From contig NW_027272118.1 in the NCBI RefSeq assembly GCF_040938485.1, forward strand, positions 620,001 through 684,000: a DNA stretch of 64,000 nucleotides, given 5' to 3'. This document shows, one piece after another, positions 28,501-46,500 of this stretch; position 1 is the first letter of the stretch; each line of letters begins with the position of its first letter. This DNA comes from Diadema antillarum (Eukaryota). The translations under genes were made by a program, and so were the position numbers. Under the pieces are notes generated by a model. It saw only the letters and a program-made list of their open reading frames with translations, ran no database searches and was not told the DNA's origin.

Positions 28501-31500
28501 TTCTGAAATAGGTTATGATATAAAGTCAAGTGTTATCTCATTATGCTAAAAATATAATAATATATAATATGTTGATCCTTTTCTATATCTTTGTCCTATA
28601 GTGACACTACAAATTGTTGTAAGTCTTCTTATCCAGTGACGGCGGTACCAAAACTTATAAAGATTCAAAACTTTTGAACAGATTGTCTGTTTTCCTTCAA
28701 ACTTCACTGATTTAGATGTACAGGTATTATGATACAACTTGTATCTCTGCATTTTTATGCCATTTACATACATATGTAATTTGGGTTTCCTTCCCTTTTA
28801 TATTACAGAACATGCAAACTAGACAAAGGTTTCTAGCGACAAATAAAGTCATGGAGGATCTTTGCTGTTGTACATCACCCCTGTTTTAGACCACTTTATC
28901 ATGCACTGATTTTTATAGCTTTGTGTAAGATACCAAAGTACAGGTGTAAAGCTCTTGAGCTGGCAAACTCAAACTGAACACTAATCACTGACTGAAAGCA
29001 CACAGCCATTGCACCGTAAGTAGGACTTTAAAGCGTCAGTGACAATAATGCTGTGTTGGCTTGCTGAAATCGCTTAATTGGACCTTCGCGGTGCTCGACT
29101 TGTATGCTAATCAAATCCTGACAGAGTCCACTGCTTGTTAAATACACTCTCTCTACACTAGCTTCAGAATCTGCAGTTGCTTGCTCGCTCCGCAGATCTA
29201 GTTCAGACACAAATTATAGAATGCATTGTGGCTAATTGCTCAGCGAGCGTTCCCTAATAACGCTTAATTTGATACTACTCTCTTTTAATACTACTCAGTC
29301 TGATGTTTTGGTTTGAAATCTGACAAATCGTGAATTTGCCGATATTCAATCAATGCCCTGGGTCAGGTAATAGTGAAGTGATGGAGAGTCAGAGCTGAAA
29401 CCTTTCTAAAAACTATATTACTGTATATTGACATACACCGTACGTAGAAACATCAAAAGAGAGAATACGGAAGAGACAGACAGAGAGACAGACATAAACA
29501 GATAGACGGGTAGAAAGAAAAAGACAGTTCAAGGGCAGTCAGGGAAAGAGAAATATACAGACAGAAACAGAAAGACACACAGACAGAAAGAGAAAGACAG
29601 ACAGACAGGCAGATTTACAATGTAACTGATGTTCAGAGTCTCCTGCCTTTAACTTTCTGGAGGTATCATATTCTATCCTTACTACTAAAATATGCATTCA
29701 ACATACACAGGCTGTACATCAAACATAAACTGCTATATAGATTTTTTTTTTTTTTTTTTTTTTGGGGGGGGGGCAGGTATGAAGTATTTTGCCATTAGAA
29801 TCTTGCATCCTGCAGAAAACTTCTTCATCATCACGCACTGAGCTACACAGATCACTGCATACGGTAAAGAAACCCATTTTTCCACTATCGATACATGCAG
29901 TGTGTGCACAAAAGCCCCACGCACTCTCCGTAGATGAATATCTTTGTCACAGAGCTGTCGTCAGAGCATATCAGGCAGGGCTTATGTAATCAGTGATGTC
30001 ACACGGGGGGAAAACTATTTAACATTTAGGCTTGCCCCTGGCAAACATCTGTATTAAATTGAATTGTCTACATCCATTACACCCTCTTCAGGACTCCAGA
30101 AGTTGAAGCACAGTTTGTGACAATGTATCGCTCCAACAAGAAATGTTTCAGTGTTTGTCCGTCTATCGGTGTGTGTTGTACACGTGATACGTTTCGACAA
30201 ATTGAGAGCTGAATTAAATCTAATTGCGACAGTCAGGAAGGTTTAACCTTGATGAAATTAAGCATAAATTTATCTCTGCTGCTTTTCGGAATTCAACAAA
30301 ACAGCTGCTCCTCAGCTTCAATATTGAGTTAATGTTTCAGAACTCATTGGCAATCAAGCATCTAATTCATTAAAGAGGGGCAGTAAACAGCTCTCACTCA
30401 GAAATAAGCAAGCATTGGATTATGCTCCTTACAGGCACAAATAAGCTGTCCAATTACAAGCATATCTCCACACTCAAATTATGGATGCAGTGTAACACTT
30501 TCACTATTTAAAACACCTAACATTTTTCAAAGGTGAAATAATAGAAATATAGAATCAAAGAAACATTTTGTTTCATGCTGCTAAAAGTGGATTTTTGATA
30601 CGATTTCCTTTACTATAGATGATTTTAAAGGGATGGTACAGTATTGGTGGAGATGAGAACTGGGCTTTTAACTTTTTGCGAGATACCAAGAAAACACTAC
30701 AGTAGATGATATAGTAGAGAGCATACCATTTTAAGAGAAATTCAAAGTTTACTTGATGAAAATTGGGTTGGAATGACTGAAACATCTAAAAACAAAGTAA
30801 AACAAAGCGATCGTAATAAAGTGTGGGTCCCACACTTTATTAGAATCGCTCTTTTGGATATCTCAGCCATTTCAAAACCAATTTTCATCAAATAAACGTT
30901 GAATTCCTCATAGAATTACATGCTCTTTCATATTTCATGAGAGGTTTCTCATTATCTCACCAAAAATGTTAGAAACCTGAAATTAGGTCTCAACCAAAAC
31001 TATACTATCCCTTTAAAATAAATCAGTACGTCTAATCATACAGGGCTGCTATTTTTCTATGAATATGTAAATGGCTGCAAAACTTCTTTTCCTTAATGTG
31101 ATCCTGATAAAAGGTGAGATCAACCTTTTATTAAAGAAGATGGTTTTGTTTTACTTTGTTTTTGGATGTCTCTGCCATTTCAAAACAGATTTTCATCAAC
31201 TAAACTTTGACCTCTTCTTAGAATTGTATGCTCTTTAACATTTCATAAAGTGGTTCTCAAGTACTGCATGTATTTCGCGAGTCTAATTTTTCGCGAATCG
31301 GGACTTCCCGACAATTTCGTGAGTGGTTAAATTCGCGATCATGGAGCTCTGTACTGAATGCACGTAATCCTATATGCAGGGCTCGACACTAACTTTTCTT
31401 TTTGGTGGCCCGATCGGGCCACCAAAATCATGAATATGTATTTTTTGGTTGCCCGAAAGTAATATCTGGTGGCCCAAAAAAAAAATCAAGAAAAACATGA

Positions 31501-34500
31501 AAAAACTAAATCGGTCCTACTAAACATAGAAACATAAATATTAAGCATTACTGAAGTAATACAGGTACCCATGTCCAACATTAGTGAATAGAAAATTCAA
31601 TCATCTTACTGTTATTCTGAGTTCTAAGATTTAGCAAATAGGCTTATAGATTATATTTAAATTTTATGCTATTTTCGTGGTCAAAACTTTTGTTTGAAAT
31701 GCGAAAGTGGGAGCATTTACAGACATTTGTAAACATCCGACTTTTGTTTTAGCATTGTAAAGAGCCGCAAGTTACCGTTATTCATTTCTGATTGTAAAAG
31801 CAATCATCCAACACTTACTAGTATTTTAGCACCTTACAGAGCCGATTGTTACCGTGAATCATTTTTAAATGTAAAAGAAAACAACCGACATTCATTTTAG
31901 CATCTTCAATACGAAGCTGAATGTTATCCCTATTCATTTCCAAACATGAAAGCAAATACCGTAAAGTTCCGTGTATAAGACGCACTAATTTTTCGTCGGA
32001 AAACATTGAAAATCGGGGGTGCGTCGTATACACGGGTACAGTCGAATCACGGAAAAAAATCCGTCATGTACACCCAATTTTATAAGGCCAACTTGGGGCC
32101 ATGTATGCCCATCGACGTTTGGAAGGTAAGCAATCACTAAAACTTACGGATAAATGAGCGATCTTTCAATCTGGACACACACAAAAGCTGCAAATACGAG
32201 ATAAACTTACATCGGCCTTGTGCAGTAACGATGTATCAATCTGGCCATAGACAACAGCTGTAACAGCACTGCTGTATGCTACCGATGTCAGTCTACCAAG
32301 CTACCAACAGCCAACCTAGTAGCTGGAATACGCGATGTACAGGTATCATTACTAAATTACCGATACTGTAAAACTTATCAATGTACTAGTATCAATATGG
32401 CCTTAGACAAAAGCTGTAAAATACGGAGTAGGATCGACACTATGTCACCGTAAATATGAACGATGTGTGAAGCATGCATGCATAATATCCATGTCGTTCG
32501 TTTGCTCTTCATTTCACGAGGCCAGCTAGGATAGCATAGCTACACTGTAGCTAGCTAGCTAGCTGGCATTTCCAAGCCTTTGGCAAAGGCAGCAGCTGTG
32601 CAGAGAGGCTTTTGCAATGGACTCGCGTGCACACAGCGATCGGATCGTAGCGCGCTTGCCCGTTGCGCGCTGTGTGTGCAAGTCCATTGCTCTCTGTGAG
32701 CGTGTGCTGAAATTATAGCGAGCTGCCTTTTGCAAAAGGCTAGCACTGTGCATACAAGCATGGTACAAGAGACACATGTTACTGGTAATCCTAAACAACA
32801 GTGAGTGTAATTACCGTACGCACCGTACGTCTCACCGTATGATCCCTCTGCTACACTTGTTGATGTTTTTCTTATTTTTCGTAATGAACCTTCCAGTCTG
32901 ACATGCGTCAATATGCGAGACACCCTCTGCTATATATGACAGCAAAGATCGTACTGTACACTCATGAGTACGATATGCATGACACATGTACCACGATTGA
33001 AAGGTGAAACAATAGCAAGTGAGTACTGAGACAAGTCTCGCATTTTGCGTTTTCCATATTTTGCCGATGTCCGATGAATACCGTTAAAAGAAAGTATAAA
33101 AGAAAATGAAAAATAGAGCAAATACATGCTGCATTCTAGGGAAATTTTGAGCTGAAATAACATGTATGACACACGCAATATTTGCGTGGAAATTTTAGGT
33201 TTTTTTTTTTTTTTAATTTTAGGTCCGAAAGTAGTGGTGCGTCTTATACACGGGTGCGTCTTATACACGGAACTTTACGGTATGCGCTATTCATTTCAGC
33301 ATCTAACTGAACCGATTGAAACCGTTAATCATTTCCAAATGTAAAAGCAACAATCTGTTATTCATTTCCAAATTTAAAAGCAAACATCCGGCATTTATTT
33401 CATCATCGTACGGAGCCGAATGTTACTGCTGTCCACTTCCGAAAGTGAAATGAATCATCTGACAATTATTCTAGCATCATACGGAGCTGAATGTTACCGT
33501 TTTTCATTTTTAAACGTCAAGGCAGACATCAGACATTTATTTTACCATCAAACGCAGCTGAATGTTACTGCTATTCATTCCGAAATGTAAAAGCAAATAT
33601 CCGACATTTATTTTAGCATCGTATGGAGCATAGTGTTACTGGTATTCACTTCCAAACGTAAAAGCAACAATCTGACATTTATTTTGCCATCTTCTGGAGC
33701 CGAGTGTTATTGCTATTTACTTTCAAAAGTAAGAGCAAACATCCAACATTATTTTGTTTAATCATCGTACGGAGTTGAATATTATTGTTATTCATTTCCG
33801 AACGTCAAAGGGATCATTCGATGTTTATTTTAGCATCTTCCGAAGCTGAATGTTGTTGCTATTTACTTTCGAAAGTAAAAGCAAACATCCGGCATTTATT
33901 TTCTCATCTTACGGAGTTGATATTATTATCATTCACTTCCGAATGTCAAAGCAAACATTCGACATTCATTCCAGCCGCGGAGCCGAATGTTATCCCTATT
34001 CATTTCCGAAAGCAAAATCAAATATCTGACATTAAATTTAGCACTGTACAGAACTGAATGTTACCGTTATTCATTTCCAAAAGTATAAGCAAACATCCGA
34101 CATTTATCTTAGTATTATACGGAGTCGAATATTACCGTTATTCATTTCTAAAATAAAAGCAAACATTGACATTTATTTTAGCATCTTACGCAGCCAATTG
34201 TTACCACCGTTCATTTCCAAAATTAAAGGCAAACATCCGACTTTTTTGGTGGCCCAATCGGGCCACAAAAATCAAGTTCATTTCTGATATTTTGGTGGCC
34301 CGACGTGCGTTTTTGGTGGCCCTGGGCCACCGGGCCACCGTTAGTGTCGAGCCCTGCTATATGTGTGTGTCACATTCATATCAGGATGAGAGTCATTATT
34401 TTGCGTGTCTTTAATTTCGCAAATAGCACCTGACTCGCGAAATTCGCGAAAATAAAAACCTCACGAAATATTCGGCGTATACAGTATCTCGCAAAAAGTT

Positions 34501-43500: not shown

Positions 43501-46500
43501 GACCATGTACATGTATGTTTATACACTGTAGATGCATAGAATGATATAATTTATCAAATAGTGTGTGAGGGTTCATCAAAACCAGACTTTCAGTATTGTA
43601 TTTTCACAACATGGAGATGTGTAGCAACTGGTTCCATGATGATTGTTAATGTGACAATTGCTCCCATTACAATGTACATTGTACATATCTGCACACCAAG
43701 CCAAACATTATTTCTACCAAAAAACATAAACCCTTACCCTAATCCTAATCCTCATATATCAAACTGAACCTAAAACCCTATCACAACCCTTACCCTAACC
43801 TAATAAAAGTCCTTGGAGAAAATAAGACTGGAGCAATTGTCGCAGAGGCAAATGTTGTGTCACGGTACGTAGCAACCACATTATGCAAATCATATGAGGT
43901 GATGTCATTGCTTTACATATTTCTCAGAGGTTGTGCTAGACTCACGCAAGGCTGTTCAGCACAATCTTTACCTCAGAGCATGGACCTATAACGTTGTAGG
44001 TCCATGCTCAGAGTCACCCCAGACACTTTGTGCCATAACCTTTCAGTCCCCATTGTCTGGGATGAACAATGAACATCTCTTGGAGGTTGTGCTGTGTGTT
44101 AGGGGACTCTAAATGGTGGAATTAGATAAATCTCTCTTTTGAATTCTTAAAATTACCTGAAAGTCTGATGCCACTTGATGTATGACAACGATTTGACACA
44201 ATAATCATATTTACTGGACTGGATGTGAAAATATTGTAAATATATGCTTTTTCATAGAAAACATATCGTGTAGATTGTACAGTTAAACTATTTTGCAATG
44301 TTCAGGTCAATTGATGGATACTGCCAGCTCACTGAACAGATTTACAAACATGAGCTGTTCATTTCCATTGAATTCCAACATAATATCTACCAACACTTGT
44401 ATGTTTACCACATGTACTTGTATAAAGTAATGTTGACTATCACTCTTGATATCGAAAATCAAATCCATCAGAAGTTTCTTGAAAATGTGAAAAGTTGTTG
44501 TTAGTATTTAAAAGCAGAGATATAATATGCAAAAAAAAAAGGCAATTGATAAGCATGTTAGGACAATCACAGACATTAACAAAACATGTACTGTAACATG
44601 AGACAGGAACATACAATGTACAATGTACGGTAAGTATTTTGTACCCCACACATCTGGCTGCTTGAAACACAGACTGTACATTACAGTAGTCCATGAGGAA
44701 GGAACCATTCCATATGACATGTAATAGCAAGGTTTAGTAGGCCAGAGCAAGAAAACGTAGTAACTTTATAGTAGACCAGAGCAAGAAAAGGAGTAAAAAA
44801 GAGTAAAAACAAAAAAGAAACACATCATTGTAGTACAGATTTATATCAAAAACCCATGTACATGTAATGCCTGTTCTGCAAAGTTCCCCTGAAATTAACA
44901 CTCTCTGCTCCAGTGTGTGTACAGCGCTATGGCGTTTTCTCTGCGAATCAACACTCACAGCACACAAAGGGTTAAAATGATGCATACTCTACACTATCTG
45001 GAAGTTATCAACACCACAAGCAGAGGACACTGCTCTGTGTTGAGGGATCTGTCACAATGCGGTGAGGCCAAGCCGGTCCAGATGCGTCATTTTGCCATAC
45101 ACTTGTACATCTAAAAAGAAAAAAACCTTATAACTAAAACATCTCCTTTCTGACATGGTGTGTTACCATGACTCATGATCGACCAGCTTAAAAGGAAACA
45201 TTCATTAAAACTGAGACTCTTTATCTAACATCAAATCTCATACCATTACATAGCTACCTCCAATGTGTATGATGGCATCATGCTCTTACAATCCGAGGGA
45301 ATGTATTAAAAGTGGACAGACACGCAACAACAAAGAAGCCCTGAATTTTACAGAGACTCCAACTCTCCCGTTTTCAACGGGAGATCTCCCGCCGAAAACC
45401 CATTTTTGCAAAATCTCCCGTTCTTCTGCTTGAGATTTCATTTCTCCCGCCCTGGCTCTTTGACTCCCATTGGACAGGATTTCTTACTTACTGAGTATTT
45501 CTATCATATGTTGAAGAAAATAAGCCTTAAATAGCACCAGAGAACATCTGGAACCCTAGGAACTTTGCGCTTCGCACCCATCAACTTGGAGTCTCCCGTT
45601 TGCTGGGGGTTTCAGGCGGGAGAATCTCCAGATCAGAAGGTGCTTTGGGTTGGAGTCTCTGAATTTACCTCATCAAGCCCACTACAATGTCACACTGAAT
45701 CTCATGGAAGGGTCTGAATCCAATTCCAGCAATACTGAATTTACATAATTGTACAATATACTGTACTTTTGGCTGTATGAATTCTGAATACCTGTAAACA
45801 GTGCAGGGCCCCATTTCATAAAAAGATGTTAGGATGGCAACTCTTGGTGGAATGACAACTTCCAATAGCAACAGCCAATCAGGAAGATGGATTCTTGTCG
45901 TTACTATGACAATTGTCATCCCAGCAAGAGTTGCTATCATATCAACTTTTTATGAAATGGGGCCCAGGACGCTTTTATATTTCATCCTTTTCCACTGATT
46001 TGTCTAAACAGCTTTTACTACCTGGTAAGCTGCATTTGTGAGCCTGACAGCTGCATGAAACTACAAAGTATACTTTAATATTCGGTAAAAGTACTTCTCA
46101 ATACTGAAAGCGTACAATCAGTATTTCGGCGCAAGTTTGTGATTTTTGTTCCCCCCTGGTCATCTATGTGTGTCTCTTATATCCATCAAAACCCAGAATT
46201 ACTATATAAAGTGAATTATACATTTTTTTTTTCAAACATAAAGTCAAAATGTAATCTATGAATCTTCCTTTTATGACATAATCTGCATGTAAATTGAACA
46301 TTAACCATGTGCACTCACATTTTGTAGAGTACACACAAATTCAATAAACAATTGTGGACAAGGTGACTCATGCTCAGAAGCACAACAATTAAAAGTCAAA
46401 CAATATGGATTGGTTTCCACTTTGAAATATCAAACAGTATAATTCACAGGTGTTGAACACCCAATGAGGTACGCACCATATTTTTTGAACCACAATGCTA

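What the first reader, a model, noticed from the sequence alone, without database searches (positions are those of the whole stretch)
43972..44013. 28-bp palindromic micro-transposon with a perfect 7-bp target-site duplication and CATG termini
Seen: CTCAGAG|CATGGACCTATAAC-GTTGTAGGTCCATG|CTCAGAG, i.e. two 14-bp arms (one mismatch) with no spacer and an exact 7-bp direct repeat on both sides. Known: P-superfamily elements make 7-8 bp TSDs, and the Drosophila P element begins CATG. Inference: this is a transposition product made of little more than two fused TIRs, far below normal MITE size. It implies a transposase able to move a 28-bp substrate, or collapse of a larger element after insertion.
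Basis: partly seen in the sequence, partly recalled or inferred. Interest (0 to 1): 0.72.

Follow-up and report, generated by a model that had tools for sequence, protein, structure and literature searches.

The report
Excision scar of a P-like transposon
The 28-base palindrome between two copies of CTCAGAG is most likely the scar left when a P-element-like jumping gene cut itself out; hundreds of such scars in this genome suggest the enzyme cuts 17 bases inside each end, as the fruit-fly P element does.

Summary
Window 43972-44013 holds a 7-bp direct repeat, a 28-bp palindrome with one mismatch, and the same 7-bp repeat.

It is not chance. The palindrome recurs at 39 places in the genome (reversed control 0), and 14 of 15 fetched copies have their own 7-bp duplication. 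Other copies of the old repeat that hosts the window's copy carry one CTCAGAG and no palindrome, so the duplication is real.

The "28-bp mobile micro-transposon" reading is not supported. The two arms are the outermost bases of a cut-and-paste family whose ends begin CATGGACCTACAAC. That family includes a ~730-bp non-autonomous member (more than 2,000 candidates, 7-bp duplications) and a decayed copy encoding a P-type transposase.

At 364 places, short remnants of both ends are joined in many ways: trimmed, with filler, or at microhomology. Retention stops sharply at 17 nt, which is the staggered cut known for Drosophila P transposase.

The 28-mer is what two 17-nt overhangs ending ...CAACGAA give when they pair at the CG of positions 14-15.

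This is a known mechanism in a new host. No allele still holding the full element was found.

The parts
43972..43978 (.). Left copy of the 7-bp target-site duplication CTCAGAG
   Evidence: Other copies of the host repeat carry a single copy at this point. It fits the family's target motif, T at position 2 and A at position 6.
43979..43993 (+). Remnant of the left transposon end (first 14-15 nt of the terminal inverted repeat). T at 43989 is a later C-to-T change.
   Evidence: It is identical to the termini of full elements L058-L069 and L073. Because of the CG overlap, the boundary with the right remnant cannot be placed more exactly than 43992/43993/43994.
43993..44006 (-). Remnant of the right transposon end (13-15 nt), read on the minus strand as CATGGACCTACAAC
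44007..44013 (.). Right copy of the 7-bp target-site duplication CTCAGAG
43911..44120 (.). Older interspersed repeat that was the insertion target. Its other copies provide the empty site.
   Evidence: One search gives 40-odd matches at 67-90% identity. Many alignments stop at the left duplication or start at the right one. One search finds the empty-site sequence in 14 copies.

Best explanation
The 28-bp palindrome is a fossil excision footprint. An element of a P-superfamily cut-and-paste family, with both ends beginning CATGGACCTACAACGAA, inserted into an old repeat at CTCAGAG and duplicated those 7 bp. That step is shown. The element was later cut out. That step is inferred. The transposase cut the transferred strand at the element boundary and the other strand 17 nt inside. 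Each flank was therefore left with a 17-nt 3' overhang of identical sequence. This is inferred from the genome-wide retention limit and from the known Drosophila P mechanism. The two overhangs paired at the self-complementary CG of positions 14-15, the two-base AA flaps were removed, and the gaps were filled and ligated. The product is 15 + 13 = 28 bp, a perfect palindrome between the two duplication copies. One C-to-T change followed. The scar has no function of its own and cannot move.
For: (1) The 28-mer recurs: 39 places, control 0. Of 15 fetched, 14 have a 7-bp flank duplication that differs from site to site.
(2) Full elements have the same ends and the same duplication length. A ~730-bp family has more than 2,113 candidate copies at about 90% identity, and 7 of 8 checked have perfect 7-bp duplications.
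(3) Junctions are heterogeneous. The first 10 nt of one end, 0-30 nt, then the last 10 nt of the other end occur at 364 places, control 0. Junctions run 20-43 bp, with ends trimmed from the inside, filler bases and recurrent microhomology forms. Most of the 30 loci show this together with a 7-bp duplication.
(4) Retention has a 17-nt limit. The terminus followed by GAA or AAA and then a base that is not the element's T occurs at 99 places (55 + 44, control 2). It continues with T at only 25. All GAA cases examined are footprints with duplications (L019, L023/24, L032, L044/45). One 17+4+17 junction is deduced from paired hits at C382 (duplicated at C644).
(5) The arms co-vary. Some 28-mers have the same change in both arms, for example G at position 7. 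A sister subfamily with that terminus exists at 309 places.
(6) There is a link to P transposase. In L073 the exact terminus lies 2.9 kb upstream, on the same strand, of a TNP-like RNase H N domain (E 1.9e-19). The broken frame there and in L074, the duplicate of the same locus, aligns to residues 22-627 of a 642-aa P-type protein. That protein's gene also has the GTP-binding insertion domain, and its element end is similar in sequence.
(7) Empty sites exist: paralogous ones for the window, and exact empty partner sequences for two other 28-mers.
(8) The 17-nt staggered cleavage is the distinguishing feature of P transposase (PMC7776569, PMC10983969). 7-bp duplications with a GTANTAC-like target are known for the P-superfamily member Galileo (PMC4168063).
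Against: No allele or paralogue with the full element still at a footprint site was found. Of four partner loci tested, two were empty and two carried the same scar. Reads from two runs show the window's scar unchanged, and the second species' contigs do not cover the site. The right end of the transposase-bearing copy was not found, so its symmetric ends are inferred only from footprints that retain 15 nt of each end. Five AAA-type loci (L025, L029, L037, L041, L043) show no right-end remnant and may be something else. Counts include near-identical duplicate contigs, probably haplotigs, so independent events are fewer than the raw numbers. A 28-mer cannot by itself reveal how many bases came from each side.
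Confidence: 0.85

Rival explanations
1. The 28-mer is a minimal mobile element: two fused terminal repeats that a transposase excises and reinserts, each insertion making a new 7-bp duplication.
For: The same 28-mer sits at about 25 or more independent sites with site-specific duplications. Two sites are polymorphic, empty versus 28-mer, with no full-length allele seen; one event would explain this where the footprint model needs two.
Against: The 28-mer is only one of many junction forms at 364 or more places, and those forms cannot all be copies of one mobile unit. The sharp 17-nt limit points to cleavage products. With 17-nt staggered cuts, a 28-bp unit would release two non-complementary 11-nt strands and no duplex. 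It lacks subterminal sequence where P-type transposases bind (established knowledge; PMC7776569). The 28-mers with matching changes in both arms correspond to termini of existing subfamilies. A few hopping elements are expected to leave many scars.
Confidence: 0.05
2. An inserted element collapsed without transposase cleavage. The cause would be an internal deletion from aborted gap repair copying from both ends, or replication slippage or hairpin removal between the inverted ends.
For: Aborted repair synthesis is how internally deleted P elements arise in Drosophila (established knowledge). The outcome would again be two ends between intact duplications.
Against: Breakpoints from such processes should be spread along the element. 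Here the retained length has a hard limit at 17 nt in the GAA and AAA end variants of this subfamily, and apparently in the ACA type of the sister subfamily. Filler bases and trimmed ends are typical of end joining.
Confidence: 0.08
3. It is a chance palindrome, or a structural or regulatory hairpin unrelated to transposons.
For: None beyond the palindromic shape.
Against: The arms are identical to transposon termini. There are 39 copies against 0 in the control. The duplications are site-specific, and the empty site is present in paralogues.
Confidence: 0.01

Closest known systems
Excision footprints of the Drosophila P element (17-nt staggered donor cleavage, end joining)
   Same: The target duplication is kept on both sides. 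Up to 17 nt of each inverted repeat is retained. Junctions show trimming, filler and microhomology. The termini start CATG. The 17-nt figure is taken from PMC7776569 and PMC10983969; the footprint spectrum of P is from my own knowledge.
   Different: Here the duplication is 7 bp, not 8. The scars are old genomic fossils, not laboratory revertants. The transposase family appears to have a different N-terminal region.
Galileo and 1360, P-superfamily transposons of Drosophila
   Same: Both make 7-bp target-site duplications with a palindromic target preference, T at position 2 and A at position 6: Galileo GTANTAC (PMC4168063), here NTYWRAN from 27 sites.
   Different: Galileo has very long foldback-like inverted repeats. 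The family here has short ones, about 17-20 bp. No sequence relationship was tested.
Zebrafish Pdre2 / THAP9
   Same: It is a deuterostome P-like element with short inverted repeats that start CAT and end CAAC (13-bp repeat quoted in PMC10983969), and it has internally deleted relatives.
   Different: Pdre2 has 8-bp duplications. The resemblance of the termini is only by eye.
MITEs and other very short non-autonomous DNA transposons
   Same: They have inverted ends and target-site duplications at many sites.
   Different: A MITE keeps the subterminal transposase-binding sequences and amplifies as a unit. The 28-mer is only the cleavage remnant, one of many junction variants, and nothing shows it moves.

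Membership tests
Transposon excision footprint (donor-site scar) | Target-site duplication retained on both sides, and a single copy at the empty site | tested here: met
   The empty site is present in 14 paralogous repeat copies. Exact empty partners exist for two other 28-mers.
Transposon excision footprint (donor-site scar) | Inner sequence equals the outermost bases of both ends of a full-length family in the same genome | tested here: met
   Termini of L058-L069 and L073 match.
Transposon excision footprint (donor-site scar) | Heterogeneous junctions across sites (trimming, filler, microhomology), with retention bounded by the cleavage stagger | tested here: met
   364 places with variable junctions. 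The limit is 17 nt: 99 places stop there and 25 continue.
Transposon excision footprint (donor-site scar) | An allele or orthologue with the full element at the same site | tested here: not met
   Four partner loci and two read sets were examined and no filled site was seen. The sample is small, so this absence is weak evidence.
P superfamily of DNA transposons | 7-8 bp target-site duplication | tested here: met
   The duplication is 7 bp at footprints and at full elements.
P superfamily of DNA transposons | Transposase with a split RNase H fold and a GTP-binding insertion domain | tested here: inconclusive
   The copy with the exact terminus (L073) has the RNase H N domain only, in a broken frame. 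The same locus (L073 and its duplicate L074) aligns over about 600 residues to a protein whose gene has both the RNase H N domain and the GTP-binding domain. The right end and the rest of the gene could not be fetched.
P superfamily of DNA transposons | 17-nt staggered cleavage at the ends | tested here: met
   This is inferred from the retention limit in fossil footprints. It is not a biochemical test.
P superfamily of DNA transposons | [quoted passage not shown] | tested here: not met
   The 642-aa frame of the related intact family shows no THAP match. It matches RAG1_imp_bd (E 2.2e-8) and, weakly, zf-AD. The catalytic-domain evidence still places it in the superfamily.
Mobile miniature element (MITE-like micro-transposon) | The unit itself is amplified as one sequence, and its diagnostic mutations are inherited between sites | tested here: not met
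   Shared variants are either duplicates of one locus (L009-L011) or changes in both arms that match subfamily termini.
Mobile miniature element (MITE-like micro-transposon) | The unit can be excised and integrated by a transposase | not testable with these tools
   This needs an excision and integration assay. The geometry of 17-nt staggered cuts argues against it.

The most novel reading that the evidence does not exclude
The 28-mer, two fused end remnants, is still recognised by the family's transposase and is itself mobile. That would make it the smallest eukaryotic DNA transposon known. The two sites that are polymorphic for empty versus 28-mer would then be direct insertions and not insertion followed by excision.
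Probability: 0.05. Interest if true: 0.75.

Novelty: new member of a known kind. Interest (0 to 1): 0.4.

Why it matters
It turns an apparent oddity into a readable record. Several hundred fossil donor-site scars let the cleavage geometry of a non-insect P-type transposase be read from the genome sequence alone. The answer is a 17-nt stagger, the same as in Drosophila. This suggests the unusual long staggered cut is an old, conserved property of the superfamily.

It also shows that a small number of hopping elements can leave many more scars than copies. The other "hairpin micro-transposons" noted in this genome should be tested as footprints before being treated as a new class.

The finding has no bearing on gene function at this locus.

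Tried and rejected
- **P-type genes found with PF12017 (L046-L057, plus the extra flanks L070-L072).** None has the terminus or any clear inverted ends within reach. They belong to other families or are domesticated, and were dropped as sources.
- **Other fetched terminus loci.** tblastn of P-type proteins against them found nothing, and they have no long frames.
- **Candidate long-element ends (L025, L037, L041).** They share no internal sequence with each other and no matching right end or duplication within 1.5 kb. They remain unresolved.
- **L073 versus L074.** These proved to be the same locus duplicated, not two insertions. Their similarity ends without a terminus.
- **14-nt stagger.** This was my first idea. 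I rejected it once the element sequence beyond position 14 was known and the GAA/AAA counts came in.
- **Reads.** The two same-species runs show no difference at the site (one stray X1 joint is listed under things noticed), and the second species does not cover it.

Full report
**Observation.** There is CTCAGAG, a 28-bp palindrome made of two 14-nt arms with one mismatch (T at 43989) and no spacer, then CTCAGAG again. Within the window the terminus occurs only there.

The genome is 1.75 Gb in 2,963 contigs. In it, the 28-mer with up to two mismatches occurs at 39 places, and the reversed control at none.

I fetched 15 of those places. Fourteen have a 7-bp direct repeat on both sides, 12 perfect and 2 with one mismatch, and the repeat differs from site to site. 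Some places are near-identical duplicates of one locus at about 99.3% over 3 kb, probably uncollapsed haplotypes. The window's own partner is on contig C688. Independent sites are therefore fewer than 39.

**The duplication is real.** The sequence around the window's copy belongs to an older interspersed repeat. Many alignments to other copies stop at the left CTCAGAG or begin at the right one. The predicted empty site (left flank, a single CTCAGAG, right flank) is found in 14 other copies, 2 exact and 8 with one mismatch.

For two other 28-mers, the partner contig carries the exact empty site with a single copy of the 7-mer (68, 71, 72). Two further partners carry the same scar, one of them with a later 6-bp indel.

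**What the arms are.** The same 14-mer followed by other sequence occurs at 297 places, against 7 for the control.
- Forty-nine of these begin a ~730-bp non-coding element. It has an imperfect matching right end and perfect 7-bp duplications in 7 of 8 cases. This family has more than 2,113 candidate copies at about 90% identity.
- Most of the other fetched places are short junctions. They consist of the left end, 0-5 or more filler bases, and a right end trimmed from the inside to 5-14 nt, between 7-bp duplications.
- Anchoring on only the outer 10 nt of each end finds 364 such places, control 0. Junctions are 20-43 bp, and sister subfamilies contribute other recurrent palindromes.
- A subfamily with G at position 7 of the terminus has 309 places of the same kind. 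This explains the 28-mers in which both arms carry the same change.
- Symmetrised over 27 independent sites, the duplications have T at position 2 and A at position 6 in 81%. Footprints and full elements share this motif, and it resembles the GTANTAC target of Galileo (PMC4168063).

**Superfamily.** The genome has many P-type transposase remnants: 79 matches to the TNP-like RNase H N domain.
- On contig C166 the exact terminus, continuing GAATGG, lies 2.9 kb upstream of such a domain on the same strand. C189 is a duplicate of that locus. On C1327 a third such terminus lies 7.6-10 kb upstream of further hits.
- The broken frame aligns over residues 90-627 in L073, and 22-627 in its duplicate L074, of a 642-aa frame from an intact multi-copy family. 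That family has at least 11 copies, two of which are 99.8% identical over 5.8 kb.
- The intact family's frame has the RNase H N domain, and the GTP-binding insertion domain in a downstream exon. Its element begins with a visibly similar terminus.

**Mechanism.** P transposase is distinguished by a 17-nt staggered cut (PMC7776569, PMC10983969). This leaves 17 nt of each end as a 3' overhang on the donor flanks. Here the terminus of the transposase-bearing type reads ...CAAC GAA T..., and a variant reads ...CAAC AAA T....
- Genome-wide, the 17-mer followed by a base other than T occurs at 99 places (55 GAA, 44 AAA; control 2).
- The 17-mer followed by T occurs at 25 places.
- Of the 16 GAA-type places that continue with T, at least 13 run on as element ends.
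- By chance, GAA after the 14-mer would be expected only a few times.
- Every GAA case I could read is a footprint with a duplication (L019, L023/24, L032, L044/45).
- Paired hits at C382 and C644 imply a 17+4+17 junction.

Retention thus has a hard limit at 17 nt, with trimming below it. Two identical overhangs ending ...CAACGAA can pair only at the self-complementary CG of positions 14-15. Removing the AA flaps and filling in gives exactly the 28-bp palindrome. This explains why that form is among the commonest single products. The steps shown are insertion with duplication, membership of the arms in the family termini, junction heterogeneity and the 17-nt limit. The steps inferred are the excision event at this site, the overhang pairing and the repair pathway.

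**Rivals.** A self-mobile 28-mer is not excluded by the empty-versus-28-mer polymorphisms, but four points count against it.
- The spectrum of junction forms cannot be copies of one mobile unit.
- The matching changes in both arms correspond to the termini of existing subfamilies.
- The unit lacks subterminal sequence.
- Cuts staggered by 17 nt cannot release a 28-bp duplex.

Internal deletion by aborted repair would not give a sharp 17-nt limit. Chance is excluded.

**Reads.** Contigs from two runs of the same species span 43817-44600 with the scar unchanged. Contigs of a second organism do not cover 43892-44055. No filled or empty allele of the window's site was seen.

**Verdict.** The micro-transposon reading is not supported, and the "collapse of a larger element" option is supported in the form of excision. 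This is a known kind of product in a new host. The modest added value is a genome-derived estimate of the cleavage stagger of a non-insect P-type transposase.

Noticed in passing
L075:1456-3381 (G000:C224) and at least 10 near-identical copies listed: An apparently recently active P-type transposon family, two copies 99.8% identical over 5.8 kb. Its 642-aa first frame matches the RAG1 importin-binding / zinc-finger region (E 2.2e-8) where a THAP domain would be expected, upstream of the TNP-like RNase H N domain. The GTP-binding insertion domain lies in a separate downstream frame.
   Followed up: partly
window 43728-43891: A very high-copy short repeat with telomere-like CCCTAA-type units lies just upstream of the finding. 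Summed contig depth is thousands of times that of the flanks in both same-species runs. It may be the telomeric-repeat MITE noted elsewhere in this scan.
   Followed up: no
L001/L007, L002/L006, L009-L011, L058/L059, L049/L050: Many loci occur twice at about 99.2-99.8% identity over 3 kb, flanks included. The assembly probably keeps both haplotypes for much of the genome, so raw copy counts are inflated.
   Followed up: partly
G000:C37:2266791, 3167419, 4389905 and other places: A sister subfamily whose ends continue ...CTAACAG leaves its own recurrent palindromic scars of 25, 29 and 32 bp. The 32-bp form fits two 17-nt overhangs paired at a terminal AT, if that subfamily's end continues as assumed (not checked).
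   Followed up: no
window 31370-34363: An element with ends beginning CAGGGCTCGACACTAAC and a 7-bp duplication CTATATG. It could be another family of the same superfamily.
   Followed up: partly
same genome, other windows (earlier notes s1-215124, s1-215318): First-stage notes describe hairpin 'micro-transposons' of about 27-30 bp with 5-bp and 8-bp duplications. They may be excision footprints of other families and not mobile units.
   Followed up: no
L013:1494-1535 versus L079 (G000:C94): Two copies of one scar differ by a 6-bp indel and a 1-bp deletion inside the palindrome, so scars keep mutating after they form.
   Followed up: partly
window 43977 to 44082: One contig of run X1 joins these two points, skipping 104 bases. 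It probably comes from another copy of the host repeat, or from misplacement at the repeated motif GAGGTTGTGCT.
   Followed up: no
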